Positions 50,384 through 63,109 of a stretch of DNA of 64,000 bases are shown in pieces. The notes below the pieces were generated by a model that was not told where the DNA came from, searched no databases, and saw only the letters and a list, made by a program, of their open reading frames with translations. Location of the stretch: IMG/VR virus record IMGVR_UViG_3300046787_000408, positions 235,984 to 299,983 of that record; one strand, written 5' to 3'. The translations under genes and the position numbers were made by a program. Each line of letters begins with the position of its first letter. The stretch's first letter is position 1.

Positions 50384-50878
50384 TATTGCTGTATGAAGCA
50401 AAGAGAAAAGGATTCAAGACGCGGGGGCAGTGCCCGCCAGGTCCACCATAAGGAAGTTTGATGAGTCGTAGTAGTCCATGGTTAAGTAAAGATAGTCCAA
50501 AAACTCTCAAGGAGTTTTATATTGAACTACACCCAGATTGGGTAGAGATTGATGGTCAGTACTTAACTGAGGATAGATGGAACGACATCGAACCAGAGAT
50601 ACTGGTTGCCATGAAGCGAGAATATGTTAAGTGTTCTGAACTTCTTGGTTGGCAAGTTTCTTTATGATGGGCCTGACACAGGATCGATTGGGTCAAGAGT
50701 AACAGAGTGGACAGCACGGCATGCAATCACCGACACAAGATTCTGAATCAAGGCTAGTCTTTGGTAGTAGGAACGACTTGGAAAACGAAGTAAACAAATT
50801 AAACGCAAACGACTCACAGTTCGCATTGGCCGCCTAAACGTAGCCTAGGGTAAGACATACCTCGTAACAGAAACTCAA
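50384..50878 (+). ncRNA. ssrA: Circularly permuted (two-piece) tmRNA: acceptor piece ~50384-50448, coding piece ~50669-50878, tag (A)ANDSQFALAA at 50805-50837
   Basis: CAGGTCC-A-CCA precedes GGGCCTG (7-bp acceptor with G3:U70); GAC plus T-arm; TTGGGTC/GATTCAA and ACAGCA/TGCTGT helix 2; promoter TTGACA-18-TATAAT. Confidence 0.92.
50458..50667 (+). CDS. 69-aa ORF inside the tmRNA intervening segment
   Basis: SD TAAGGA right after the CCA; stop TGA ends one base before GGGCCTG. Confidence 0.55.
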   Translation: MMSRSSPWLSKDSPKTLKEFYIELHPDWVEIDGQYLTEDRWNDIEPEILVAMKREYVKCSELLGWQVSL

Positions 50879-51571: not shown

Positions 51572-51692
51572 GGGCAAAGTCTCAAACTTTCGTGTCAAAC
51601 ATGTGCGCACACGCACATGTTTTGTTAGATAACCACTGTATAATAGCAACATAAACAATCAGTTTATAAATCATTTTTAAAAGGAAAAAATA

Positions 51693-52592
51693 ATGACTAC
51701 AACAATCACCATCAAAGACAAAGCAGTAAACACCACATACCAAAACGTTACTGGATTAACAGGCGGCGCAGGCGTTGATGCAGTATTTGATGTAACCAAA
51801 ACCAACGGAACATATTCTGTTGTGCTCGACAGCTTGGCAGCAAGTGCTGGTACAGGCTATGTGGCTGGCGACACAATCACTCTTGCTGGCACAGCCCTGG
51901 GTGGTACAGTTGCCAACAACTTGATCGTTACAGTTGCCACAGTTGGTGCCGCAGGTAAAATTGCCACATTTGGTGTGGTAGGTACAGGTCGTGTTGGCGA
52001 CGGTACAGTTGACGTTGCGGTTGATGTTACTGGTACCGAAGGCGTTGACACCTACACATTTGGGGGCTCCAGCACAGAATTCACTGTGACCAAGGCCGCA
52101 GACAAGATCACAGCAGCCAGCACCCTGGCTACCAATGTTTCATACACTCTTGAAGATCACGAGCGTGTGGTGTTCACAGACAAGGCCATTGCTTATGATG
52201 CTGACGGTCGTGCAGGTGATGTATATGCATTGTTAGCTGCCGCTTTGGGCACAGCAGATGTTACTGATGCGTATACTGGAATTGGTATCCATCTTGCTGA
52301 CGCTGGTTGGACCAACAAGCAATTGGCAGAAGCCTTGTTGGCCACAGACACTTACAAAACTGATGCTGGCGGCGTAAGCACAGAAACTTTCATCAAGCAC
52401 GTTTACAAAAACGTCACAGGTACTGACGCTACATTAGCTGATGTTACCGAACTTACCAATTGGATGAACGGTAACCAGTACAGCCAAGCTGATGTGTTGG
52501 TGATTGCTAGCGAGTTGGCCAGCTTTGAAACTGCTATTGGCTTGACTGGTCTTGCCACTACAGGCATTGACTACACGCCATTTGTTGCCTAA
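51693..52592 (+). CDS. Thr/Gly/Ala-rich protein with C-terminal DUF4214/S-layer-like domain
   Basis: LAEALL...STETFIKHVYKNVTG; SD AAGGA. Confidence 0.6.
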   Translation: MTTTITIKDKAVNTTYQNVTGLTGGAGVDAVFDVTKTNGTYSVVLDSLAASAGTGYVAGDTITLAGTALGGTVANNLIVTVATVGAAGKIATFGVVGTGRVGDGTVDVAVDVTGTEGVDTYTFGGSSTEFTVTKAADKITAASTLATNVSYTLEDHERVVFTDKAIAYDADGRAGDVYALLAAALGTADVTDAYTGIGIHLADAGWTNKQLAEALLATDTYKTDAGGVSTETFIKHVYKNVTGTDATLADVTELTNWMNGNQYSQADVLVIASELASFETAIGLTGLATTGIDYTPFVA

Positions 52593-52651
52593 ATTGACAA
52601 AAAGAGCAACAAAATATTTGACTTTTGTTGCTCTGTCATATATACTACACT

Positions 52652-52750
52652 ATGATGACAGCAATCGCAATCACGTTTAAAAACATACCTGCCAATTATG
52701 AGCAGGCCTATGAGCGCGATTGTATCTCGGGGCTTTGTCGTTGTAGTTAA
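52652..52750 (+). CDS. Leader peptide 1 (MMTAIAITFKNIPANYEQAYERDCISGLCRCS)
   Basis: ATG at the predicted +1 of TTGACT-17-TATACT (52618-52646); stop lies in the loop of the antiterminator hairpin. Confidence 0.6.
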   Translation: MMTAIAITFKNIPANYEQAYERDCISGLCRCS

Positions 52751-52800
52751 CAAAAGTACTACATTCTACAAAGACCCGCACATGATGCGGGTTTTTCTTT
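52728..52800 (+). terminator. Attenuator 1 (antiterminator/terminator)
   Basis: CGGGGCTTTGT/ACAAAGACCCG and TGTAGT/ACTACA versus ACCCGCA-CATGA-TGCGGGT-TTTTCTTT. Confidence 0.7.
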
Positions 52801-52806
52801 ATGTAC

Positions 52807-53029
52807 TAGACCAATAATTGAAAGAGTGTTACAATAGAAACAAGTTAGAGATACAGCGAAGTTTGCAAAGACCCTACAGTGATGCGGGGCTTTTGCAAAA
52901 CAAGTTGACCAGTATTGCACATCGTGTTATACTAGAGGCTAGTTAGGAAGAACAACAACTGCTCCGGAAACGGTAGCACTGCTAGAAGACACAGAAGCAG
53001 TTGACAAATATTCCCAACAGTGTTATAAT
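52807..53029 (+). promoter_or_regulatory. Three tandem sigma70-like promoters
   Basis: TAGACC-17-TACAAT, TTGACC-17-TATACT, TTGACA-17-TATAAT. Confidence 0.75.
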
Positions 53030-53380
53030 AAACACTTAGCAACAAACGATCGAGTAGTTGCGTAGAATTCCTTAAAAATTTACATGTATGATTACCCGGC
53101 AAGACAACACTTGACACGATTTTGATGTTCGGTGATAACAGTCCGTAATGCTGTGAAGCAAAACGTAGCCGGGGATCATATAAAAATGCACATTAGTTAG
53201 AAAGTCCAGCTAAGTTGAGCGTCCCCTGTAAAACGGGGAAAGAGCTAGAATTGCAGGTTAGTATTGCTTTTGTGTGTTTTTATATGATTTTTGATGCACT
53301 ACTTGCCTGAGCGAAAAACTCGTGGTAAACTACAAGAGACAGAGGGTTCGAATCCCTGGGACTGGTAGTGTGTCTTTTAT

Positions 53381-53455
53381 ACTGGGTTCGTCTATCGGTT
53401 AGGACATCAGGTTTTCAACCTGAGAAGACGGGTTCGACTCCCGTACCCAGTACCA
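53381..53455 (+). tRNA. tRNA-Glu(TTC)
   Basis: Cloverleaf; loop TTTTCAA; CCA. Confidence 0.9.
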
Positions 53456-53519
53456 AGTTTATGAGTTCGTCTAGAAACCGGTAAATTGTAGTTTAGTCTA
53501 CAAGCTCGTAATTGATCAT

Positions 53520-53594
53520 GGTGCGTTCATATAATGGTCATTATCCTGGATTGTCTATCCAGAGACGGGAGTTCGATTCTCCCACGCATCGCCA
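53520..53594 (+). tRNA. tRNA-Asp(GTC)
   Basis: Cloverleaf; loop TTGTCTA; GCCA. Confidence 0.9.
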
Positions 53595-53601
53595 AGTTAC
53601 T

Positions 53602-53690
53602 GGATCTTGTTCCCCATTGCCGGCTGTAACCCGGTAGGCATTGTCAAGTGGGGTGGTTGCCAAGTAGTTCGATTCTATCAAGATCCACCA
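53602..53690 (+). ncRNA. Non-canonical tRNA-Tyr(GTA)-like RNA
   Basis: 8-bp acceptor GGATCTTG/CAAGATCC, 4-bp T stem, ACCA; GCCGG-CTGTAAC-CCGGT arm; no normal D arm. Confidence 0.55.
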
Positions 53691-53766
53691 GTTTTATAGG
53701 AGAGTCGCTGCGAAGCGAATTCTTAAACGACCCGTAGAACTCCCGGGCGTCCTGTAGTTAGTATAT

Positions 53767-53851
53767 GGAGAATCCGCCGCAATGGTGTGGCAGGGGACTG
53801 TAAATCCTCCGACTTAGGTCATGACTGGTTCGATCCCAGTATTCTCCACCA
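53767..53851 (+). tRNA. tRNA-Tyr(GTA)
   Basis: Cloverleaf with variable arm; loop CTGTAAA. Confidence 0.9.
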
Positions 53852-53857
53852 ATTTTT

Positions 53858-53997
53858 GTGGTAAGTTTGGTTGACAGGCTATTTGACTGTATGCGTAGCA
53901 GGATTGCAAACCCGAGGGGCATATGGCGATGGGAAGTGATATCACCCGTTTGTAAAAACAGATAGCTAGGCAGGTTCGAATCCTGTTTACTACACCA
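53858..53997 (+). ncRNA. Expanded (140 nt) tRNA-like RNA with Cys(GCA)-like loop
   Basis: GTGGTAA/TTACTAC acceptor, GCAGG-TTCGAAT-CCTGT T arm, ACCA; internal TTGCAAA loop. Confidence 0.5.
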
Positions 53998-54099
53998 AGT
54001 TTATGTCTGGGTCTGACATGGTGTTTCTGATGCGATTGATCACGCAAAGGAGAATGTGGCTCGATACCACGCCCGGCGCCAAATACTAAGGCAATAACA

Positions 54100-54282
54100 A
54101 GTACTAGAGTAGATGGAAACCGACCCATGCGAGACTGCGTGGGCTTCACACTTAGAATGTGACGATGCGAAAGTAAGTCGGTCCAGTAGGGTAAGGAAAA
54201 GTGTTGCTGGCGGAAAAAGCTGCTACCAGACAGAAGTTAAGCGGGCCTAGGCTGACAGTTTAACGCCGTGTACTCTGGAACT
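54100..54282 (+). ncRNA. Orphan structured RNA
   Basis: Closing stem CTAGAGTA/TACTCTGG; internal ACCGAC/GTCGGT and CCCATGC/GCGTGGG. Confidence 0.4.
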
Positions 54283-54351
54283 AATTTATGCTCTATTAGC
54301 TCAATTGGGAGAGGAAAGTAGAGCACGGACTAAATATAGTAGAGGTCTACT

Positions 54352-54741
54352 ATGTTAAAAATTTTTAAATGTCTTTACTGTCAAAAAGAAAATCCGTGCA
54401 AAAAGAATCACATGCACAAGTACTGCAATAATATGTGTCAGAGATTGCACAGCATTACCGAAGCGATGAATGGTGATTCTCCCACTAAAGGAGTTGCACA
54501 AAACTATATGCGGAAATTTGTTGAATACAAATGTGTACATTGTGGAATAGGTTCTGAGTACAACGATAAACCTATAACATTGCAAATTGATCATATTAAT
54601 GGAGTTCGGACTGATCACAGAAAAGTAAATCTGCGATGGTTATGCCCGAATTGTCATTCCCAAACTGAGACTTGGGGATATAAGAATGTTTCAGATGAAG
54701 GTAAACGCAAAATACAACTTGCGTTAAACGGTAAGAAATAG
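54352..54741 (+). CDS. HNH endonuclease (free-standing, homing-type)
   Basis: CVHC...LQIDHING...NLRWLCPNCHSQT; AT-rich; inside the tRNA array. Confidence 0.9.
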   Translation: MLKIFKCLYCQKENPCKKNHMHKYCNNMCQRLHSITEAMNGDSPTKGVAQNYMRKFVEYKCVHCGIGSEYNDKPITLQIDHINGVRTDHRKVNLRWLCPNCHSQTETWGYKNVSDEGKRKIQLALNGKK

Positions 54742-54815
54742 GTCTCAAAGTGTTCATGGACGCACACAACACTGTCACTGTTGAAGAAGGGGATCGTTAC
54801 CCCTTGAGACCGCCA
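54741..54815 (+). tRNA. tRNA-Asp(GTC), second copy
   Basis: Loop CTGTCAC; atypical T loop ATCGTTA. Confidence 0.85.
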
Positions 54816-54822
54816 AGTTAAT

Positions 54823-54900
54823 GGGCGATGACTGTTGTAAAGGATAACAGGCGGCAGTAACTCTGCCGTGACAGTGGTTCGATTCCACTATCGTCCACCA
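54823..54900 (+). ncRNA. tRNA-like RNA with Ala-type acceptor (G3:U70, A73)
   Basis: GGGCGAT/ATCGTCC-A-CCA; T arm AGTGG-TTCGATT-CCACT; 7-bp arm with 5-nt loop instead of a normal anticodon arm. Confidence 0.6.
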
Positions 54901-54907
54901 TGAATAT

Positions 54908-55016
54908 GGGTTGTCAAGGAAGGTCACATGCACGGTGAGTAGCCGTAGGAGCATTATCGAGTGTGCGCCACCGCACTCTTGGTCAGACATGGGTTCAAGT
55001 CCCATACAATCCACCA
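54908..55016 (+). ncRNA. 109-nt tRNA-like RNA with Ala-type acceptor
   Basis: GGGTTGT/ACAATCC-A-CCA; GAC plus ATGGG-TTCAAGT-CCCAT. Confidence 0.55.
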
Positions 55017-55020
55017 AGTT

Positions 55021-55242
55021 TTGTTGTAGTGTTAGCAAGTGAAGTCACGCTAGCGAGGTTTCTTCGAAGGACCGAGTCAGTAGAAGGTTGCGGGTTCGAT
55101 GCCCGACTGGTCGCTTGAGTGGGACTGGTATACATGATGGCGTATCAACTGGATGAATCTCAAGTAACGTACCGAGTCCTAGCCCGGGCTATATGCAAAT
55201 AGGTGAATGGTGTCAATAACGATGGTGACACTACTGCAACAA
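55021..55242 (+). ncRNA. Orphan structured RNA
   Basis: Closing stem GTAGTGTTA/TGACACTAC; internal T-loop hairpin CGGG-TTCGATG-CCCG. Confidence 0.4.
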
Positions 55243-55251
55243 ATTCAACAT

Positions 55252-55326
55252 GTCGCATTAGACTTCTGGTGAGGTCATCACCCTTTCAAGGTGACCAGAC
55301 GGGATCGTAACCCGTATGCGACTCCA
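55252..55326 (+). tRNA. tRNA-Glu(TTC), second copy
   Basis: Loop CTTTCAA; T loop ATCGTAA. Confidence 0.85.
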
Positions 55327-55421
55327 TTGATAAACACACTTACAGATCCGCCCGAGTAGTAAGGGAGACAGCGACTAACCGTTGAAGGACTGTTTAAAAG
55401 TGTGTTTTTCAATGGAACAAT

Positions 55422-55513
55422 GCCCCTATAGTTTAATGGTAAAACGGCGGATTTATATCCCGTAAGCAACAGATAATTGGTTCATCTGGGTTCAATTCCC
55501 GGTGGGGGTACCA
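55422..55513 (+). tRNA. tRNA-Ile(TAT) with long variable region
   Basis: Loop TTTATAT; ~22-nt variable region; ACCA. Confidence 0.7.
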
Positions 55514-55520
55514 AAAAGTT

Positions 55521-55708
55521 AAGCTGGCCTGCCTGCGTCTAAAACTCAATGACGATGGGCCCAACTACCAGGGACTCCAGTTGATCCACTGCCTCTGGGG
55601 ATTAAGTTGCCATGACTGCTAGTCACAGTCGAACCATGTTGGTGGAAGGAAGGGAGTGCAGTGATGTATTCCGTACCTTTAAACGCAGGGTAGTAGGCGG
55701 ATCAGTTT
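55521..55708 (+). ncRNA. Orphan ~190-nt rod-like RNA (6S-like size and shape, unverified)
   Basis: CCTGCGTCTAAA/TTTAAACGCAGG closing helix. Confidence 0.35.
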
Positions 55709-55783
55709 ATCCAATTTGTGTTGACAAGCAATGTTGTTTGTCATACAATAGATACTTAGACAGTAACAAAAGTCTTTAAACAC

Positions 55784-55876
55784 ATGCACATCAAGGCGCC
55801 GTACACGCCGATGATATGTGGTATTCAGCACTGCCACTGGCAGTGTGAGGCAGGTTCGAATCCTGTATAGTGTGCA
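55784..55876 (+). ncRNA. tRNA-like RNA without CCA, with its own promoter
   Basis: TGCACAT/GTGTGCA stem; GCAGG-TTCGAAT-CCTGT; promoter TTGACA-17-TACAAT (55721-55749). Confidence 0.4.
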
Positions 55877-55939
55877 GTTGTTTACAGATTTGGTAAAATT
55901 AGTTGTTGACAAGTTCAACAATTGATGTTACAATAAGAT

Positions 55940-56828
55940 TCCGGGGCAGTTTAATGTCCTACTAGGTAGCTTGCTATCTAGTGAAGAATAAGCTGAGTGA
56001 TCAGCCCAAAGGAGGTATGCCTACATAACTCCGCCAGCAATGGTTCGTTTAGACAAGCCTGCTCAGACTCGCGAGAGTCCCTTTACTGATAAGACCGGTG
56101 GAGGTAACAATGACGCTGGATGTTGTGGAAAGAACGTTTGCTTACCGGCCCGCAAGGGTAACCGGAGCAGATGGAAAGTAACAGGTGGTGCTGACTTCAC
56201 AACTAAACCAGTCCAGTTAATTGGTATGAGAAAGGGTAGTGTATTTGTCCGAGGTGTTGCAACCAAGGGCTCGTATGCAGTTTGAGTGGTTGGTGGATTG
56301 GCAGCAATGTCAAGACGCAGATCGCAAAAGACGACTGAGTAGTTCGCAAGACGAAAGGTACGTGGTGTGTTGTATTGTGTATTCCAAAAGAGTATGCAGC
56401 AACTGAGTCAGCACATCGCAGTAGGTTGTTATAAGCTAATGGTAAGCTAACTCCCTGTTAAGGAGTCGACTGCGGGTTCAACTCCCGCTAACGATTAAAA
56501 TGCAAAGACTGACTCGGTCGTATGTGAAAAGCATCTAATACTTGAGGCGCAAGCTAATCAAGTCAGACGTAACTCGCAAGGTGAAATCTGTTTATGCTGG
56601 AAGTTTCGTAAGGTGTTAGCGCACTTGAATGGCTCGCAAGGTCAACGGGATAGATGGCGTAGAATAGCATACGGCGACAAGACTACTGCCTGTCTTTAAA
56701 AACGGCGATGCTGATAGCAGACATGGATACCTGGCAACAGGGCTGTGTGGAAGTCGAGAGAAAGCTGGCTCGCAAGGCTGGTAATAATGCTCGAGGTGCT
56801 ATTGGGAGAGATGTATTCTCAGTCCTCC
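55940..56828 (+). ncRNA. GOLLD-like large ornate RNA
   Basis: ~890 nt without a credible ORF; promoter TTGACA-17-TACAAT (55906-55934); at least six CGCAAG-capped hairpins; lies in a phage tRNA array; contains an embedded tRNA. Confidence 0.75.
56425..56495 (+). tRNA. tRNA-Asn(GTT)-like domain embedded in the large RNA (no CCA)
   Basis: GTTGTTA/TAACGAT; AGCT-AATGGTA-AGCT; ACTCC-CTGTTAA-GGAGT; GCGGG-TTCAACT-CCCGC. Confidence 0.75.
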
Positions 56829-56933
56829 ACTATTCTAAAACACATTACATGCACAATGGGTAGACATGGTAGTATTGCTTGTGATACAGCAGTATAACGC
56901 TGTGGTAGTGTATTTCAGAATGGTAAATAATTG

Positions 56934-57007
56934 CGCGGGTAGGGTGGTCACCACACCGGTCTCATAAGCCAGGTGCATCGGCAGTTCAAATCTGTCACCC
57001 GCATCCA
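56934..57007 (+). tRNA. tRNA-fMet-like (CAT), degenerate D arm
   Basis: C1:A72 mismatch; loop CTCATAA; CCA. Confidence 0.65.
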
Positions 57008-57139
57008 AATTCGTAGTTTTTCAGCATGTGGTATAAATACAACACTGAAAAACATTTAGTGGTTGACAACAATCACTAAGTAAAGTATAATTAACACTTG
57101 AACAGCAACAAAGCTGTTTGAGTAACCCAAGGAAACAAA

Positions 57140-57271
57140 ATGACTTCTATTACTTGTTCACTGTTAACCAAACAAATGCTCCAGGCGACACAAACCTGGT
57201 CGCACGCCTTTGGTCGCGTGAATAGTATTCCGGGAGTCTCAGGGTCTTGTGAAGGTGGTGGTTACGCATAA
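57140..57271 (+). CDS. Leader peptide 2 (MTSITCSLLTKQMLQATQTWSHAFGRVNSIPGVSGSCEGGGYA)
   Basis: Promoter TTGACA-17-TATAAT (57063-57091); SD AAGGA; stop in the antiterminator loop. Confidence 0.7.
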   Translation: MTSITCSLLTKQMLQATQTWSHAFGRVNSIPGVSGSCEGGGYA

Positions 57272-57329
57272 TAGCAGTAACTAACAAACTCAAAAGACCC
57301 TGGAACTAAAAACTCCAGGGTTTTTCTTT
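57240..57329 (+). terminator. Attenuator 2 (antiterminator/terminator)
   Basis: CAGGGTCTT/AAGACCCTG and GGTTAC/GTAACT versus CCCTGGA/TCCAGGG-TTTTTCTTT. Confidence 0.75.
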
Positions 57330-57511
57330 ATGTGTAATGAGTAACGAGGACTCAGCCAGCACACTAAACTAGGCAAACGGGCGGACAGGACACATGAACG
57401 TGTGGTGAGAACACACTAGTAAGACTCCTGGTCGGGGTATCAACCCCGTCATGTGGTGTAGCAATACACTGCATTCTAAAACACACTTGCTGAGTATGTT
57501 TTAGAATGTAT

Positions 57512-57586
57512 GGGCTGTTAGTGATAGTGGTAGCACAGTGGCTTTGCAAGCCTCGGGCAGGAGTTCGATTCTCCTACGGTCCACCA
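57512..57586 (+). tRNA. tRNA-Ala(TGC)
   Basis: G3:U70; loop TTTGCAA. Confidence 0.88.
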
Positions 57587-57595
57587 TATGTTAAT

Positions 57596-57670
57596 GTATC
57601 TCTGGTGTAATGGCAGCATCGCGGATTCCAAATCCGTTAGGTCAGGGTTCGAGTCCTTGGGGGTACGCCA
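57596..57670 (+). tRNA. tRNA-Trp(CCA)
   Basis: Loop TTCCAAA; G73. Confidence 0.9.
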
Positions 57671-57678
57671 ATTTTTGT

Positions 57679-57752
57679 TCGGGAATGGTGTAGAGGTAAC
57701 ACAACAGACTTTGACTCTGTCGTCCCTGGTTCGATCCCAGGTTCCCGTGCCA
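57679..57752 (+). tRNA. tRNA-Gln(TTG)
   Basis: Loop CTTTGAC. Confidence 0.9.
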
Positions 57753-57760
57753 GTTTTTGT

Positions 57761-57836
57761 GGGGGTATAGCTCATCTGGTAGAGCAGGTGCTTTGCAAGC
57801 ATCAGGTGGCAGGTTCGAGTCCTGTTGCCTCCACCA
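57761..57836 (+). tRNA. tRNA-Ala(TGC), second copy
   Basis: Canonical cloverleaf. Confidence 0.93.
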
Positions 57837-57837
57837 T

Positions 57838-57912
57838 AGCCGTGTAGCTCAGAGGAAGAGCGCTGTCTTGATAAGGCATAGGTCGACATTTCGAAATTGT
57901 CCATGGCTACCA
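57838..57912 (+). tRNA. tRNA-Ile(GAT)
   Basis: Loop TTGATAA. Confidence 0.85.
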
Positions 57913-57920
57913 ATTTTTAT

Positions 57921-57999
57921 TCCGAGAAACTCGAGCAAGGTGCATGAGCTTGACTGTTAATCAATGGTTAGGTGGGTTCGATTCCCACACTCGGAGCCA
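57921..57999 (+). tRNA. tRNA-Asn(GTT)
   Basis: Loop CTGTTAA; atypical D arm. Confidence 0.8.
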
Positions 58000-58041
58000 A
58001 TTTTTTTGTAGTAGGCGAGAGTGCCTACTAAGTAGTTTACT

Positions 58042-58131
58042 GGTGCGGTCCTATAATGGTATTAGAGCAGATTGCTAATCTGTCGCTCGGCGTAATCCGG
58101 GTTCTGAGTTCGAGTCTCAGTCGCACCGCCA
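58042..58131 (+). tRNA. tRNA-Ser(GCT)
   Basis: Loop TTGCTAA; long variable arm. Confidence 0.9.
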
Positions 58132-58139
58132 GACAACAT

Positions 58140-58215
<76 letters not shown>

Positions 58216-58222
58216 TGTTTGT

Positions 58223-58297
58223 TCCTCGATAGCTCAGTGGTAGAGTGCCGGACTGTTAATCCGTTGGTCCCTGGTTCGAGCCCAGGTCGAGGAGCCA
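58223..58297 (+). tRNA. tRNA-Asn(GTT), second copy
   Basis: Canonical cloverleaf. Confidence 0.92.
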
Positions 58298-58304
58298 TAA
58301 TTTA

Positions 58305-58379
58305 GCCCTTGTATCCTTAGTGGTAGAGGTCCTGTTTTGTAAGCAGGGTGTGGTGGTTCGATTCCATCCTGGGGCACCA
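58305..58379 (+). tRNA. tRNA-Thr(TGT)
   Basis: Loop TTTGTAA. Confidence 0.85.
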
Positions 58380-58434
58380 CAAACATAGTCAATACTCTCC
58401 CTTGACGAGCTAGGTCACTAGACTATTTTCTTTC

Positions 58435-58508
58435 GCCCTATTAGTATAATGGTATTACACCTGTTTTGTAATCAGGTTACGGCAGTTCGATTCTGTCATG
58501 GGGCACCA
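58435..58508 (+). tRNA. tRNA-Thr(TGT), second copy
   Basis: Loop TTTGTAA. Confidence 0.88.
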
Positions 58509-58559
58509 CTTTCAAGCCTATACTCAATCCTGCCGTGACGACTGTCCCTGGGCTTTTAT

Positions 58560-58636
58560 CTTTGTATGGCGCAGCCTGGTAGCGCACTAGTCTGGGGGAC
58601 TAGGGGTCGCAGGTTCGAACCCTGCTACAAAGACCA
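58560..58636 (+). tRNA. tRNA-Pro(GGG)
   Basis: Loop CTGGGGG. Confidence 0.9.
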
Positions 58637-58645
58637 ACTTTCAAT

Positions 58646-58723
58646 CTCTGTGTAATGTCAATCTGGTAGACGGCCTGATCTGGAGTCAGGAGGCTGTACG
58701 TTCGAATCGTACCATGGAGACCA
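58646..58723 (+). tRNA. tRNA-Pro(TGG), atypical C33/A37
   Basis: CCTGA-TCTGGAG-TCAGG. Confidence 0.8.
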
Positions 58724-58730
58724 ATTCAAC

Positions 58731-58806
58731 GCCGCGGTAGCTCATCAGGTAGAGCAGCAGACTGAAAATCTGTGTGTGGCTGGTTCGAGTCCAGCTCGTG
58801 GCACCA
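58731..58806 (+). tRNA. tRNA-Phe(GAA)
   Basis: Loop CTGAAAA. Confidence 0.92.
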
Positions 58807-58899
58807 TTTTATCCTTGAGTTAAGCGGGGCCGTATACACCCTTGCCAATAGAGTTAGTAATGTGTTCTGCAACAGACACCTCAGGGGCCAATTTACGAT

Positions 58900-58977
58900 G
58901 CGTCTCTAGTTCAACTGGATAGAACACCGGCCTACGAAGCCGTGAGGTTGGGGATTCGAATTCCTCGGGACGCACCA
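58900..58977 (+). tRNA. tRNA-Arg(ACG)
   Basis: Loop CTACGAA. Confidence 0.9.
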
Positions 58978-59041
58978 AAAAACAGTTGACAACATTCTGT
59001 AATTGTTGTATAATTAGAACTTAAACAAAAGAGGTAACACT

Positions 59042-59065
59042 ATGAAACGTTCAGGTAAACGATAG
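59042..59065 (+). CDS. Mini leader ORF MKRSGKR
   Basis: Promoter TTGACA-17-TATAAT (58986-59014); SD AAGAGG; stop abuts hairpin 59065-59101. Confidence 0.5.
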   Translation: MKRSGKR

Positions 59066-59127
59066 TGTCATCCTAGACCCCCGTATGGTCCTGGATGGCA
59101 CGTAAAAGACAATTCTTTACGATCCAT

Positions 59128-59204
59128 CCCTTCAAGATGTTACTGGTTAGCATACCGGACTCTTAATCCGAGAAGTCTGAGTTCGAATCTCAGTGGAGGG
59201 ACCA
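59128..59204 (+). tRNA. tRNA-Lys(CTT)
   Basis: Loop CTCTTAA. Confidence 0.82.
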
Positions 59205-59207
59205 TAT

Positions 59208-59285
59208 GGGGGTATAGTGTTAACGGTTTAGCACAGCGGACTTTTAATCCGCCAGGTCAGGGTTCGAATCCCTGTGCCCCTACCA
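59208..59285 (+). tRNA. tRNA-Lys(TTT)
   Basis: Loop CTTTTAA. Confidence 0.9.
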
Positions 59286-59411
59286 TATGCAAACACATTA
59301 ACCTGCGAAAAAGAATTCCGATGCATAATCGGCCAGTGTATAGTGTGTTTACATATGGTATTAATCTATCGACGGGTAGACACCATGCTGGGGAGTAATT
59401 AACCTCAGGAA

Positions 59412-59484
59412 CTCGCGGTCTTCTAAGTGGTAAGAAAGCCCCGTTATGGGGGTGAATGCAGGTTCGAACCCTGCCCGCAATGAG
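59412..59484 (+). pseudogene. Degenerate tRNA
   Basis: Intact D and T arms; 6-nt anticodon loop; broken acceptor stem; no CCA. Confidence 0.5.
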
Positions 59485-59503
59485 TTTGCTAGACTTCTTT
59501 GGT

Positions 59504-59578
59504 GTGGCTATGTTGTAACGGTTAGCAACAGAGATTGTGATTCTCTTAGTCTGGGTTCGATTCCCAGTAGTCACCCCA
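59504..59578 (+). tRNA. tRNA-His(GTG)
   Basis: Loop TTGTGAT; C73; no encoded G-1. Confidence 0.88.
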
Positions 59579-59588
59579 AAGAGGTTTT

Positions 59589-59663
59589 GGTTGTATGGCG
59601 TAGACGGATGCGCACGGGCTTCATAAGCCCAGGAGGTTGGATCGATACCAACTACAACCACCA
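59589..59663 (+). tRNA. tRNA-Met(CAT)
   Basis: Loop TTCATAA; T loop ATCGATA. Confidence 0.82.
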
Positions 59664-59664
59664 C

Positions 59665-59739
59665 GGGTCTTTAGTTCAACGGATAGAATGCCATGCTTCG
59701 AACTTGGCGATGTGGGTTCGATTCCTGCAGGACCCGCCA
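59665..59739 (+). tRNA. tRNA-Arg(TCG)
   Basis: Loop CTTCGAA. Confidence 0.88.
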
Positions 59740-59747
59740 AACAACAG

Positions 59748-59794
59748 TTGACAAATAAACATGCTTGCGTTATAATACAAGCTGTTCTTTAAAA
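59748..59794 (+). promoter_or_regulatory. sigma70 promoter plus boxA-like element
   Basis: TTGACA-17-TATAAT followed by TGTTCTTTAAAA. Confidence 0.7.
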
Positions 59795-59814
59795 ACTTAA
59801 TTCAAGATTAAAGT

Positions 59815-59888
59815 GCCTGGGTAGTTAAATGGTATAACAAGCGGCTGATAACCGCTAATCACAAGTTCAATTCTTGTCCTAGGTACCA
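59815..59888 (+). tRNA. tRNA-Ile(GAT), second copy
   Basis: Loop CTGATAA. Confidence 0.88.
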
Positions 59889-59889
59889 A

Positions 59890-60060
59890 TTAAAACTTTT
59901 CAATGAAATTCATGGCGTCTTCCATGCTGGTAAAATATCGCATGGTCAGGCGTTCGTTGTAAATATCATTGACAAAGATGTAACACACAGAACCTGTGTC
60001 GTTGACGCTCAAGTGTATTTGTACACTGCCGTTAGCTGCAATAAAGTTTCTTGTTCGCAT
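59890..60060 (-). CDS. Small antisense-oriented protein within the tRNA array (56 aa)
   Basis: MRTRNFIAANG...; TAAATA upstream on minus strand; fits exactly between two tRNAs. Confidence 0.55.
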   Translation of the reverse strand: MRTRNFIAANGSVQIHLSVNDTGSVCYIFVNDIYNERLTMRYFTSMEDAMNFIEKF

Positions 60061-60072
60061 CGTGTATTTAAC

Positions 60073-60146
60073 GCGGGGTTGGTATAGTGGCTGTGCTCTA
60101 GCCTTCCAAGCTAGTGAGACGAGTTCGATCCTCGTACCCCGCTCCA
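60073..60146 (+). tRNA. tRNA-Gly(TCC)
   Basis: Loop CTTCCAA. Confidence 0.9.
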
Positions 60147-60153
60147 TATTTTT

Positions 60154-60229
60154 GCCTGGTTGCGCAGAGAGGTTATGCATCTCCTTTACACGGAGAACGA
60201 TGTCAGTTCGAGTCTGACACCAGGTACCA
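60154..60229 (+). tRNA. tRNA-Val(TAC)
   Basis: Loop TTTACAC. Confidence 0.88.
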
Positions 60230-60238
60230 GTTAGTTTT

Positions 60239-60312
60239 CTCGGTATGGTGAAATGGTATCACTGAACGTTTGGGACGTTCGAGCGTAGGTTCGATTCCTG
60301 CTACCGAGACCA
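60239..60312 (+). tRNA. tRNA-Pro(TGG), second copy
   Basis: Loop TTTGGGA. Confidence 0.9.
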
Positions 60313-60457
60313 AGAGCAGCGTATGAGTTACATCATTCAGTATGAGTCACAAGGTACCGCGGTAAATCCTTGGGCAAGCAATAGTACGTACATCAATGTA
60401 ACAGGTGGTAGTGATCTACTAACGGGCCAGCCTCAAAAATTGTGTCCACCAATCTAT

Positions 60458-60535
60458 GCACAGGTGGCGGAGAGGCCCAACGCAAGGGATTGCAAATCCC
60501 TAAAACCGTGAGTTCAAATCTCACCCTGTGCTCCA
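60458..60535 (+). tRNA. tRNA-Cys(GCA)
   Basis: Loop TTGCAAA; U73. Confidence 0.9.
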
Positions 60536-60541
60536 AACAAC

Positions 60542-60633
60542 GGAAAGTAATGCAGCGGGGATGGTCCTGCGACTGGCCTTGAAAACCAGGTTCTCTTAAC
60601 AGGGATGGGGTTCGACTCCTCTGCTTTCCGCCA
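60542..60633 (+). tRNA. tRNA-Ser(TGA) with 8/4 fold
   Basis: 8-bp acceptor GGAAAGTA/TGCTTTCC; 4-bp T stem; loop CTTGAAA; long variable arm; G73. Confidence 0.8.
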
Positions 60634-60658
60634 ATAAGTAAGTGCAAAGGATTTAGTG

Positions 60659-60832
60659 ATGGAAAACAAAACACAACTATTTGAAAACAAGATCACTCTT
60701 GAGCGCTACATTTGCGACAATGTTCGCATGGTTCGCACACTTGAAGGACAAGAGTTCCTGAGTGTACGTCGAGAAGGCGAAACTCGCAAATTTTTAATTC
60801 GTCGAGACAGTTTGCGTCAAGTAAACAGTTAA
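60659..60832 (+). CDS. Small protein within the tRNA array (57 aa)
   Basis: SD AAGGA; MENKTQLFENK...; stop abuts the next tRNA. Confidence 0.6.
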   Translation: MENKTQLFENKITLERYICDNVRMVRTLEGQEFLSVRREGETRKFLIRRDSLRQVNS

Positions 60833-60907
60833 GTCTCTATAGTTCAATGGATAGAACAAGTTCCTCCTAAGAATTAGATACAGGTTCGATTCCTGTTGGA
60901 GACACCA
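60833..60907 (+). tRNA. tRNA-Arg(CCT)
   Basis: Loop CTCCTAA. Confidence 0.9.
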
Positions 60908-60914
60908 AACAAAT

Positions 60915-60999
60915 GCGTTAGTGGTGGAATGGTATACACGTTGGTCTTAGAAGCCAATGCCCTAGTGGATTGAGAGTTCGAGTCTCTCCTGACGCACCA
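60915..60999 (+). tRNA. tRNA-Leu(TAG)
   Basis: Loop CTTAGAA; variable arm. Confidence 0.9.
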
Positions 61000-61050
61000 T
61001 GAACTCGCTTTTGCTGACAGCGTATAATAGGACAAGTAGTCAGCACACTT

Positions 61051-61124
61051 AGGTCATTAGCTCAAAGGTAGAGCGCTTGGTCGACATCCAAGATACAGCG
61101 GATCGATACCGTTATGACCTACCA
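61051..61124 (+). tRNA. tRNA-Val(GAC)
   Basis: Loop TCGACAT (C33); T loop ATCGATA. Confidence 0.8.
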
Positions 61125-61131
61125 AACACAT

Positions 61132-61208
61132 GCCCCGGTGGTGGAATTGGTAGACACGCAACGTTGAGGTCGTTGTATCTGTGGGTTCGAGTCCCATCTG
61201 GGGTACCA
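61132..61208 (+). tRNA. tRNA-Leu(GAG) with short variable loop
   Basis: Leu-type D arm; loop TTGAGGT; 5-nt variable region. Confidence 0.85.
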
Positions 61209-61214
61209 AACAAC

Positions 61215-61298
61215 GCGACTGTGGTGGAATGGTATACACAGCAGACTTAAAATCTGCCGCTTAATTGATTGAGGGTTCAAGTCCCTCCAGTCGCACCA
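61215..61298 (+). tRNA. tRNA-Leu(TAA)
   Basis: Loop CTTAAAA. Confidence 0.92.
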
Positions 61299-61624: not shown

Positions 61625-63109
61625 ATGTTAATAAAAAATGTAGATGTGGTACTTCTTTGCCATTCGTTGATATCTTTTAAAAAAGCTGGTCCATATAGAA
61701 TTGCTACCGAGCTTCGATCAAATGGGTACTCATGTCAAATTATTGATGCCGCCTGGTATTTTGATCAAAATGAACTCAAAACAATACTAGATTTTTGCAT
61801 AGGTCCAGATACAAAAATTGTTGCATGGAGCAGTCCATATGCTGACATGCACGAAAAAGAACAATGGGGTGTGGGATTTAGAGAACACCTGACTGTTGAG
61901 TTTCATGAGGAATTCATTATTGACTATGCAAAAACCATCAACAACAAGATCAAATTTGTAGTAGGTGGGCCTACTGCTTACAAAAGGCAATCTGACCCGG
62001 GAATCAACACTGTATTTTATGGCATGAGTGATGCTGCCATTGTTGCTTATCTCAAGTTCCTAGAAGGAAAAAATCCGTTTTTTCAGTACACAGTTCAAGA
62101 TGGTACCATGATAGTAGATGGTAATTCTTACAATCTGTCATGGGAGTTCAACCAAAGCTTGATAGAGTACCAGCCAGAAGACAATATACTACATGGCGAT
62201 GCAACCATGATTGAGATTGCTAGAGGTTGTATTTTCAAATGCGATTTTTGTAGTTACCCATTAAACGGTAAAAAGAGCAATGAATATATCAAGTACAAAG
62301 ATACCTTGTACAACGAATTTTTGCACAACTACACACATTTTGGAATTAAAAAATACATTGTGTCCGATGACACATTTAACGACAATCTGCAAAAGTTACA
62401 AATGATGGCCGAGATTGCACAGTCTCTTCCGTTTAAACTTGAACTAGCTTGCTATATCAGGATTGACCTAATACGGGCACATCCTGAACAGTATCAATTG
62501 CTCAAAGACATTGGTCTTGCTGGAGCATTTTTTGGTATAGAAAGCTTGAATCACCAATCGCTCAAGTCTATAGGTAAAGGATTGCATCCTGACAAAGTGG
62601 TTGCAGAACTGTATCAATTTAGAGATCAACTGCCCAATTGCGGCACTATGGGTAGTTTTATTGCAGGACTTCCTTATGAGACCAAACATAGTCTAGAGAA
62701 CACAGTGTCGCTGACCATGGATCACGATTTCCCTATTGACATATTGCGCATGGAACCATTGACTATAAACTCAATGAGAAAGCACAATTCAAGTGAGTTT
62801 GAGAAAAATTCTTCAAAATATTTTTCTATTGATCCAAGCAAACGCAACTATCTTGGACATGAATTTTGGCACAATGGAGATTTTGATCTAGCATATGCCA
62901 AGGATTTTTGTCAAGATTTCATGAAAAAATTAAGCAGTACTGGTAGAAATCGAATTGGCGGATTCCAAGTAATGGCCTTGCACAACTACTATCCGGATGT
63001 ACCGGCGGCCCATGTGTCCCCAAGTCAACTGCCAGTAACATTGGAAATGCAACAAGCAAAACTTGATAGGTACAAGAGCATGGTATTTGACAACAAAATC
63101 AAAACATAG
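61625..63109 (+). CDS. B12-binding-type radical SAM protein
   Basis: EIARGCIFKCDFC, SDDTFN, FFGIES, FIAGLPYET. Confidence 0.85.
   Translation: MLIKNVDVVLLCHSLISFKKAGPYRIATELRSNGYSCQIIDAAWYFDQNELKTILDFCIGPDTKIVAWSSPYADMHEKEQWGVGFREHLTVEFHEEFIIDYAKTINNKIKFVVGGPTAYKRQSDPGINTVFYGMSDAAIVAYLKFLEGKNPFFQYTVQDGTMIVDGNSYNLSWEFNQSLIEYQPEDNILHGDATMIEIARGCIFKCDFCSYPLNGKKSNEYIKYKDTLYNEFLHNYTHFGIKKYIVSDDTFNDNLQKLQMMAEIAQSLPFKLELACYIRIDLIRAHPEQYQLLKDIGLAGAFFGIESLNHQSLKSIGKGLHPDKVVAELYQFRDQLPNCGTMGSFIAGLPYETKHSLENTVSLTMDHDFPIDILRMEPLTINSMRKHNSSEFEKNSSKYFSIDPSKRNYLGHEFWHNGDFDLAYAKDFCQDFMKKLSSTGRNRIGGFQVMALHNYYPDVPAAHVSPSQLPVTLEMQQAKLDRYKSMVFDNKIKT

What the first reader, a model, noticed from the sequence alone, without database searches (positions are those of the whole stretch)
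52618..52900. Attenuator 1: leaderless leader peptide with the same architecture but different sequence
Seen: ATG at the predicted +1 and a 32-codon ORF. Hairpin CGGGGCTTTGT-CGT-TGTAGT-[TAA loop]-ACTACA-TTCT-ACAAAGACCCG overlaps terminator ACCCGCA/TGCGGGT-TTTTCTTT. Both attenuators share AAAGACCC...GGGTTTTTCTTTATGT, which suggests common origin. A degenerate copy (CAAAGACCC...GATGCGGGGCTTTTG, 52866-52895) follows. An inverted repeat AGAGCAACAAAA/TTTTGTTGCTCT straddles the -35. Caveat: three more promoters lie downstream (52807-53029), so this switch may only modulate output.
Basis: partly seen in the sequence, partly recalled or inferred. Interest (0 to 1): 0.75.

Follow-up and report, generated by a model that had tools for sequence, protein, structure and literature searches.

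The report
Leaderless mini-ORF with switchable terminator
At the head of a giant freshwater phage's tRNA gene array sits a small promoter, 32-codon reading frame, hairpin and terminator cassette that belongs to a conserved family built like a ribosome-sensing transcription attenuator, but this copy's switch looks weak and three further promoters follow it.

Summary
That covers a sigma-70-type promoter (52618-52646), an ATGATG start 5 nt after the -10, a 32-codon ORF (52652-52750), a long hairpin (52728-52778) sharing 4-5 nt with the intrinsic terminator (52770-52796), a hairpin copy at 52865-52896, and three downstream promoters.

The window is the end of a 300-kb IMG/VR jumbo-phage contig. 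The element lies between a structural-type gene and a 36-tRNA array.

Homologous cassettes occur in at least 20 related freshwater phage contigs, always upstream of tRNA genes. The terminator and the long hairpin both show compensatory changes. The reading frame stays open while its N-terminal codons drift freely, so translation matters more than the peptide.

In several relatives, and in the window's second cassette (57063-57333), the ORF-end/terminator pairing out-competes the terminator in naked RNA. The terminator returns when the ORF end is masked, which is attenuator logic.

In this copy a G.A mismatch leaves the terminator core at 0.97 probability, no different from shuffles. Strong promoters also follow directly.

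Verdict: a real, conserved attenuator-type cassette. Here it probably works mostly as a self-terminating small transcription unit with at most modest read-through control. The link between Tyr/Glu/Asp codons and the downstream tRNAs is suggestive only.

The parts
52603..52634 (.). Perfect 12-bp inverted repeat with an 8-nt loop that contains the -35 of P1. It sits directly after the stop codon of the upstream CDS (51693-52592). It is probably the 3' hairpin of that gene's mRNA. It has no T-run on the + strand.
   Evidence: It is unique in the 300-kb genome. At this position relatives carry an ordinary terminator instead.
52618..52646 (+). Promoter P1, TTGACT-17-TATACT.
   Evidence: It is the same type as about 57 plus-strand promoters of this genome and is conserved in homologous cassettes.
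52652..52750 (+). Leaderless 32-codon ORF with ATGATG at the predicted +1. The conserved core is Y-x-x-A-Y-E-x-D (codons 16-23), with an invariant ATA codon at position 12.
   Evidence: There are no Pfam or PHROG matches. A profile search found only 4 true small homologues among 1.84 billion proteins.
52728..52778 (+). Long hairpin, the candidate anti-terminator. The outer stem is CGGGGCTTTGT paired with ACAAAGACCCG, with a G.A mismatch at 52732. The inner hairpin is 52742-52763, and the stop codon lies in its loop.
   Evidence: Across 12 homologues 93.8% of cells are paired, and the stop-codon TAA/TGA change is compensated by TTA/TCA.
52770..52800 (+). Intrinsic terminator t1: an A-tract, the stem ACCCGCA/TGCGGGT, and a T-run.
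   Evidence: 100% paired, 3 pairs with compensatory change, 0 of 500 shuffles as high. The same hairpin-plus-terminator follows the CDS directly in ORF-less relatives.
52807..52835 (+). Promoter P2, TAGACC-17-TACAAT. Relatives have a full TTGAC -35 here.
52865..52896 (+). Conserved stem-loop, a terminator-like copy without a T-run, immediately upstream of the -35 of P3.
   Evidence: 12 variants all fold, with compensatory changes (GCAAAG/CTTTTGC versus GTAAAG/CTTTTAC, and the inner stem also changes).
52905..52933 (+). Promoter P3, TTGACC-17-TATACT.
53001..53029 (+). Promoter P4, TTGACA-17-TATAAT, a full consensus match.
53381..53851 (+). The first tRNA genes downstream: Glu(ttc), Asp(gtc), Tyr(gta).
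   Evidence: Glu and Tyr head the cluster in every related cassette locus, after two Leu tRNAs in the L003 type. Asp is present in most, but is missing from the tRNAs listed for L083, L103 and L109/L110.
57063..57333 (+). Homologous second cassette. Promoter 57063-57091, Shine-Dalgarno-led 43-codon ORF 57140-57271, ORF arm 57240-57248 pairing with 57294-57302, terminator 57293-57325. No strong promoter lies before the next 13 tRNA genes.
   Evidence: (terminator probability 0.00 in naked RNA).

Best explanation
The element is a self-contained, translated mini transcription unit of a jumbo phage. Promoter P1 starts the RNA at or next to a 5'-terminal AUG (inferred). A 32-codon frame is read without a leader (inferred). 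The RNA ends at intrinsic terminator t1 (hairpin shown by covariation; actual termination inferred).

The cassette belongs to a family in which the last codons of the frame pair with the 5' half of the terminator. Under that design:
- a ribosome that reaches the stop codon melts this pairing and allows termination;
- an untranslated RNA, or one with a ribosome stalled upstream, keeps the pairing and reads through into the tRNA array.

This is ribosome-dependent attenuation. In this copy the pairing is weakened by a G.A mismatch and overlaps the terminator by only 4-5 nt. Three promoters also follow it. It therefore most likely terminates nearly constitutively. That yields a roughly 145-nt RNA and shields the tRNA promoters from upstream transcription, with at most a small translation-dependent read-through.
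For: - Leaderless start: the promoter and ATG spacing match 11 long leaderless genes of the same genome.
- Conservation: the cassette is conserved in different gene contexts and always lies upstream of tRNA clusters.
- Translation: the frame is open in every variant while the other two frames carry 2-3 stops. N-terminal codons vary equally at positions 1, 2 and 3 (7, 8 and 8 of 16). The homologous ORF is kept with a Shine-Dalgarno leader in the window's second cassette and as a leaderless ORF in L051/L069.
- Structures: terminator covariation and long-hairpin covariation.
- Switch in the family: in naked RNA the terminator core has probability 0.37 (L084), 0.47 (L003), 0.01 (L169), 0.00 (window cassette 2), 0.02 (L069) and 0.01 (L098), against 0.96-1.00 for shuffles. 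Masking the ORF arm restores a full terminator.
- Ribosome position: masking to mimic a ribosome at the stop codon frees the terminator 5' half. Masking at the Tyr codons keeps it paired.
- Weak switch here: terminator probability 0.97, and the minimum-energy fold keeps a 7-bp terminator.
- ORF-less relatives: they have the small hairpin and terminator without any overlap.
Against: - No transcript 5' or 3' ends are known. Public RNA runs gave only contigs of relatives.
- Nearly all A and B2 cassettes are followed within 3-40 nt by a strong promoter. That limits what read-through could regulate and fits a stand-alone unit.
- There is no run of identical regulatory codons.
- No upstream 'protector' hairpin was found, so naked RNA is predicted to read through in the strong-switch relatives. 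This differs from trp-type attenuators.
- The cognate versus non-cognate arm/terminator test was mixed: rank 1 in 6 of 13, and the window ranked 5th of 9.
- All energies are equilibrium predictions, not co-transcriptional kinetics.
Confidence: 0.5

Rival explanations
1. This is a fully working leader-peptide attenuator. Ribosome stalling at the Tyr, Glu, Asp or ATA codons, when the matching charged tRNAs are scarce, lets the long hairpin form and drives read-through into the Glu/Asp/Tyr/Ile(tat) tRNA genes.
For: - The conserved core is rich in Tyr, Glu and Asp: 5 of 8 codons here and 6 of 7 in the L003 type. Those three amino acids make up 14% of the phage proteome.
- The next tRNA genes are always Glu and Tyr, and usually Asp.
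- L003-type peptides are Leu-rich, and Leu tRNAs were added downstream in those phages.
- An ATA codon is invariant, and tRNA-Ile(tat) lies in the same cluster.
- Masking to mimic a ribosome at the Tyr codons keeps the terminator 5' half paired.
- A sub-threshold Trp_leader hit covers 52715-52800.
Against: - This copy's terminator is not antagonised (0.97; p = 0.35).
- Three promoters lie between it and the tRNAs.
- The peptide-wide codon/tRNA test shows no enrichment for the window (0.17 for its own set against 0.27-0.33 for others).
- The 'stall window' was chosen after seeing the data, and the homologues are not independent.
Confidence: 0.2
2. The cassette is a stand-alone gene for a 32-residue micro-protein. 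The hairpin and terminator serve only 3'-end formation and RNA stability.
For: - It has its own promoter and terminator, and the next promoter follows directly.
- A hydrophobic N-terminus and an acidic/aromatic middle recur across variants.
- Other small leaderless ORFs exist in these phages.
Against: - N-terminal codons show no third-position bias, so most of the peptide is not under purifying selection.
- The conserved C-terminal residues coincide with RNA arms.
- There is no match to any protein family.
- The ORF-end pairing that tracks each terminator is unexplained by this view.
Confidence: 0.12
3. The terminated RNA of about 145 nt is itself the product. It would be a small regulatory or dual-function RNA, as with the rnTrpL attenuator RNA of Sinorhizobium.
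For: - It is a discrete unit with a strong promoter and a stable 3' structure.
- The core is conserved at all three codon positions.
- There is precedent for attenuator RNAs acting in trans (PMC6614838).
Against: - No target is known.
- Conservation of the frame, of ATGATG at +1, and of the ORF under a different initiation mode in cassette 2 all point to translation.
Confidence: 0.13
4. The hairpin and terminator simply end the upstream CDS. The promoter-like site and ORF are chance.
For: - In L069, L070, L062, L051 and L046 the same small hairpin plus terminator follows the orthologous CDS directly, with no ORF.
- The inverted repeat after the CDS has no T-run.
Against: The promoter plus ORF is conserved behind unrelated upstream genes that have their own terminators (L084, L003, L004, L168, L169).
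Confidence: 0.05

Closest known systems
Leaderless trpL attenuator of Sinorhizobium meliloti (rnTrpL / peTrpL)
   Same: The transcript begins with the start codon of a short leader ORF. An intrinsic terminator lies behind the ORF, and a small terminated RNA is released (PMC6614838).
   Different: That system regulates a Trp biosynthesis operon that has no promoter of its own, and it uses consecutive Trp codons. This element sits in a phage, ahead of tRNA genes that have their own promoters. It has mixed codons and a weak anti-terminator in this copy.
Classical enterobacterial leader-peptide attenuators (trp, his, leu, thr, ilv; Rfam Trp_leader RF00513, Leu_leader RF00512)
   Same: A short ORF, a hairpin overlapping an intrinsic terminator, and a dependence on ribosome position predicted by masking.
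   Different: Rfam scores are far below the gathering thresholds: 20.8 against 41 bits and 17.4 against 50 bits. There is no 1:2 protector hairpin and no codon run. The ORF is leaderless. The downstream genes are tRNAs, not biosynthetic enzymes.
Polycysteine leaderless short ORFs of mycobacteria (Cys-responsive attenuation)
   Same: A leaderless sensory short ORF whose translation state controls downstream expression (bioRxiv 10.1101/834739).
   Different: That mechanism controls translation by unmasking a ribosome-binding site. This element has a transcription terminator and no downstream coding gene.
Ordinary terminator-promoter junctions of this phage genome
   Same: A small hairpin, then AAAACCCGC...GCGGGTTTTTT, then a TTGACC promoter also occurs at genome position 181441-181513 and after the orthologous CDS in relatives.
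   Different: Those junctions have no promoter/ORF in front, and their hairpin does not overlap the terminator.

Membership tests
Ribosome-mediated (leader-peptide) transcription attenuator | A promoter followed by a short translated ORF | tested here: inconclusive
   The promoter and a 32-codon ORF are conserved. The frame is open in all variants, and the spacing matches 11 leaderless genes. Neither transcription nor translation has been observed.
Ribosome-mediated (leader-peptide) transcription attenuator | An intrinsic terminator between the ORF and the regulated genes | tested here: met
   Hairpin plus T-run at 52770-52800. It is 100% paired with 3 compensatory pairs in 12 homologues.
Ribosome-mediated (leader-peptide) transcription attenuator | An anti-terminator mutually exclusive with the terminator | tested here: inconclusive
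   In this copy the overlap is 4-5 nt, the minimum-energy fold keeps a 7-bp terminator, and terminator probability is 0.97, equal to shuffles. The feature is met in relatives and in cassette 2 (terminator probability 0.00-0.47).
Ribosome-mediated (leader-peptide) transcription attenuator | Regulatory codons cognate to the regulated product | tested here: inconclusive
   The core Y-x-x-A-Y-E-x-D matches the downstream tRNA genes Glu, Asp and Tyr. There is no tandem run, and the peptide-wide test is negative for the window.
Ribosome-mediated (leader-peptide) transcription attenuator | Downstream genes depend on read-through, with no promoter of their own | tested here: not met
   Three promoter-like sites lie at 52807, 52905 and 53001, before the first tRNA. 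The feature is met for the window's cassette 2.
Rfam Trp_leader (RF00513) / Leu_leader (RF00512) | A score at or above the curated gathering threshold | tested here: not met
   Scores are 20.8 bits against 41, and 17.4 bits against 50.
Leaderless mRNA | The transcript 5' end coincides with the start codon | not testable with these tools
   Only spacing can be assessed. The ATG lies 5 nt after the -10, with a second ATG 3 nt later. The motif CACTATGATG is conserved in both cassette families.
Intrinsic (Rho-independent) terminator | A G+C-rich hairpin directly followed by a U-run | tested here: met
Known protein families (Pfam, PHROGs) | A significant profile match for the ORF product | tested here: not met
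   No hits. A profile search of 1.84 billion proteins found only 4 small homologues.

The most novel reading that the evidence does not exclude
Freshwater jumbo phages may gate transcription of their tRNA gene arrays with ribosome-sensing cassettes. The short frames would sample the very codons served by the tRNAs encoded downstream. Loss of host tRNAs or of translation capacity, for example through host anticodon nucleases, would then switch the terminators off and boost phage tRNA synthesis. The window's second cassette (57063-57333) would be the working example, and this copy a decayed one.
Probability: 0.17. Interest if true: 0.85.

Novelty: new variant of a known kind. Interest (0 to 1): 0.55.

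Why it matters
Phage tRNA arrays are now seen as counter-measures to host tRNA-cleaving defences, but how their expression is controlled is almost unknown. A conserved cassette that couples termination to ribosome progress, placed inside such arrays, would be the first sign of feedback control of phage tRNA synthesis. It would also extend leader-peptide attenuation to a new kind of target, RNA genes in a virus.

Library searches for attenuation linked to phage tRNA genes found no description of this.

The family offers natural strong and weak variants for testing. For annotation, the analysis also shows that leaderless expression is routine in this phage group.

Tried and rejected
- **Known phages.** A BLAST search of 51600-54000 against phage records matched only tRNA genes, so there is no annotated close relative.
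- **RNA runs.** Four RNA-type runs were laid on 52300-54000. They hold only assembler contigs, mostly of relatives. They give no 5' or 3' ends and no coverage of 52652-52800 in the two true metatranscriptomes.
- **Rfam.** At gathering thresholds nothing lies in 52593-53380. In E-value mode there are only sub-threshold leader-like hits.
- **Arm/terminator specificity.** The duplex matrix of cognate against non-cognate pairs was mixed, and the window ranked 5th of 9.
- **Sequestration of the terminator 5' half.** All 12 cassettes were above the shuffled mean. Individually only some were significant, and the window gave p = 0.35. An earlier version of this script timed out.
- **Peptide-wide codon/tRNA match.** Negative for the window and positive only for the L003 type.
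- **Inverted repeat as a repeated operator.** Rejected: there is no second copy in the genome.
- **RiPP precursor for the radical-SAM gene at 61625.** Considered and dropped: the cysteines are not conserved across variants.
- **Literature.** Searches found leaderless attenuators but nothing on phage tRNA arrays.

Full report
**Context**

The window is the last 64 kb of a 299,983-base IMG/VR virus record, estimated 81% complete. It carries:
- 38 tRNA genes, 36 of them in one array at 53381-61298;
- a GOLLD RNA at 56362-56825 and a permuted tmRNA at 50387-50837.

No annotated phage is close to it. Only tRNA genes match in the phage collection. More than 80 related contigs from freshwater metagenomes encode an 80-89% identical copy of the upstream gene 51693-52592. 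The finding lies in the 790-base gap between that gene and the first tRNA.

**Observation**

- Promoter P1 is TTGACT-17-TATACT at 52618-52646.
- ATGATG begins at 52652, 5 nt after the -10, and opens a 32-codon frame that ends with TAA at 52748-52750.
- The long hairpin has its 5' arm at 52728-52738, an inner hairpin at 52742-52763 and its 3' arm at 52768-52778.
- The terminator is at 52770-52796, followed by a T-run.
- The motif shared with the second site at 57293 is not expected by chance: 2 matches against 0 in 100 shuffles.
- The 'degenerate copy' is a hairpin at 52865-52896. Twelve sequence variants from relatives all fold, with compensatory changes.
- The 12-bp inverted repeat at 52603-52634 encloses the -35.
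- Three further promoter-like sites follow at 52807, 52905 and 53001.

**Is the leaderless start credible?**

The 300-kb genome has about 57 strong plus-strand promoters of this type, against 3 on the minus strand. Eleven of them are followed, 5-6 nt after the -10, by the ATG of a long ORF of 66-300 residues. Leaderless expression is therefore routine in this phage, and the 32-codon ORF has the same geometry. The motif CACTATGATG after the -10 is conserved in two different cassette families.

**A conserved family**

Pattern and profile searches recovered homologous cassettes in many contigs.
- Family A holds the window, L084, L083/L162, L168, L169 and about ten L003-type variants.
- Family B holds the window's second cassette at 57063-57333, L051/L069, and L085, L098, L102 and L147.
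- A DNA profile of family A detects family B, so the two 'attenuators' of the window are homologous.
- The cassettes sit behind unrelated upstream genes, each with its own terminator. They are always upstream of tRNA clusters in the same orientation.

In five relatives (L069, L070, L062, L051, L046) the orthologous upstream gene is followed directly by the small hairpin and terminator. There is no promoter or ORF, and the hairpin does not overlap the terminator. The terminator is therefore an older boundary element, and the promoter-ORF part is an addition.

**Structures**

In a 12-sequence alignment:
- The terminator stem is paired in 100% of cells, with three pairs changed on both sides; no shuffle of 500 does as well.
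- The long hairpin is paired in 93.8% of cells.
- The second base of the stop codon (TAA or TGA) covaries with its partner (TTA or TCA) in four sequences.
- The three outermost pairs, which compete for the variable part of the terminator stem, are unpaired in this register in 2-3 sequences. Other registers can pair there.

**Translation versus peptide**

- The frame is open in all variants, while the other two frames carry 2-3 stops each.
- Among L003-type variants, codons 3-18 vary equally at codon positions 1, 2 and 3 (7, 8 and 8 of 16). Codons 19-26 are almost invariant at all positions.
- The window's cassette 2 keeps the homologous ORF behind a Shine-Dalgarno leader, whereas L051/L069 keep it leaderless.
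- No protein family matches. A profile search of 1.84 billion proteins found only four small homologues.

This pattern fits an ORF whose translation matters but whose product mostly does not. It argues against a conventional micro-protein.

**Does the hairpin control the terminator?**

| Cassette | Terminator-core probability in naked RNA |
|---|---|
| L084 | 0.37 |
| L003 | 0.47 |
| L106 | 0.74 |
| L124 | 0.74 |
| L168 | 0.64 |
| L169 | 0.01 |
| Window cassette 2 | 0.00 |
| L069 | 0.02 |
| L098 | 0.01 |
| Upstream-shuffled controls for these nine cassettes | 0.96-1.00 |
| **This copy** | **0.97 (equal to its shuffles)** |
| L083, L085, L102 | 0.98-0.99, unaffected (shuffles 0.96-0.99) |
| L147 | 0.85 (its own shuffles also 0.85) |

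- Masking the ORF arm, as a ribosome would, restores a full terminator.
- Masking to mimic a ribosome at the stop codon frees the terminator 5' half. Masking to mimic a ribosome at the conserved Tyr codons keeps it paired.
- That is attenuator logic, with one difference from trp: no upstream protector hairpin was found, so untranslated RNA is predicted to read through.
- The cause of the weak switch here is visible. The arm reads CGGGGCTTTGT, with a G.A mismatch at 52732, where L084, L168 and L169 have GCG-A-GGTCTTTGT covering the whole 5' half of the terminator. The minimum-energy fold keeps a 7-bp terminator beside a shortened hairpin.
- Sequestration of the terminator 5' half before the 3' arm is made is not above chance for this copy (p = 0.35).

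**What could read-through regulate?**

In every A and B2 cassette a strong promoter starts 3-40 nt after the terminator. Here, three promoters follow it. Only the B1 cassettes, including the window's second one, have no strong promoter before the next tRNA genes: 13 tRNAs at 57512-58977. Cassette 2 is thus the convincing attenuator candidate. For this copy, read-through could only add to promoter output.

**Codons and tRNAs**

- The conserved core is Y-x-x-A-Y-E-x-D here and D-L-Y-A-Y-E-R-E-D in the L003 type.
- The next tRNA genes are Glu and Tyr in every cassette locus. Asp is present in most but is missing from those listed for L083, L103 and L109/L110. Two Leu tRNAs precede them in the L003 type.
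- Tyr, Glu and Asp together make up 14% of residues in this phage. My estimate from that figure, corrected for window position, is about 0.05 for 5 of 8 here and about 0.001 for 6 of 7 in the L003 type.
- An ATA codon is invariant, and tRNA-Ile(tat) lies in the same cluster.
- Against this: the window was chosen after seeing the data, the homologues are not independent, and a peptide-wide test shows no enrichment for the window. I treat the link as a lead only.

**Direct evidence**

Public RNA-type runs hold only short contigs of relatives and give no transcript ends.

**Comparison with known systems**

- Leaderless leader ORFs are known in the Sinorhizobium trpL attenuator, whose terminated RNA also acts in trans (PMC6614838).
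- They are also known in mycobacterial Cys-responsive short ORFs (bioRxiv 10.1101/834739).
- The Rfam leader models score far below threshold, so this is not a member of those families.
- Library searches found no report of attenuation in phage tRNA arrays.

**Verdict**

This copy most likely terminates nearly constitutively and has little to regulate. The family as a whole, and cassette 2 in particular, deserve experimental testing.

Noticed in passing
window 57063-57333: The second, homologous cassette is a much stronger attenuator candidate. Its ORF arm (57240-57248) pairs with the terminator 5' half (57294-57302) so well that the terminator has probability 0.00 in naked RNA. No strong promoter lies before the next 13 tRNA genes (57512-58977).
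   Followed up: partly
window 56362-56825: A GOLLD RNA (192.6 bits) with a tRNA-Asn gene (56424-56497) inside it, in the middle of the tRNA array. Two promoters (55721, 55906) lie upstream of it.
   Followed up: no
window 50387-50837: A phage-encoded permuted (two-piece) tmRNA. Relatives carry tags such as ANDSQFALAA and ANDEQFALAA.
   Followed up: no
window 53036-53385: The 350 nt between the consensus promoter P4 and the first tRNA fold unusually well (z = -3.6), with a 19-bp stem pairing about 53173-53191 with 53271-53289. A T-arm-like GGTTCGAATCC lies at about 53345. No Rfam family or tRNA was called. It may be an unknown structured RNA.
   Followed up: partly
whole genome G000: About 57 consensus-like sigma-70 promoters lie on the plus strand against 3 on the minus strand. 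Eleven long genes start 5-6 nt after the -10, so leaderless mRNAs appear to be a regular expression mode of this phage.
   Followed up: partly
window 54352-54741: An HNH endonuclease gene is inserted between tRNA-Tyr and tRNA-Asp inside the tRNA array.
   Followed up: no
window 55422-55513: A tRNA-Ile with anticodon TAT, 92 nt long, which is unusually long for an Ile tRNA. It is conserved in relatives (L084, L124, L085, L102).
   Followed up: no
L144, L146, L156, L157, L166, L167: The same promoter/ATGATG leaderless arrangement heads a conserved, very basic 46-residue ORF (MMNAKA...KHRNKEQ type) in other contigs. This looks like a genuine small protein rather than a leader.
   Followed up: no
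window 61625-63109: A 494-residue radical-SAM protein gene lies directly after the tRNA array.
   Followed up: no
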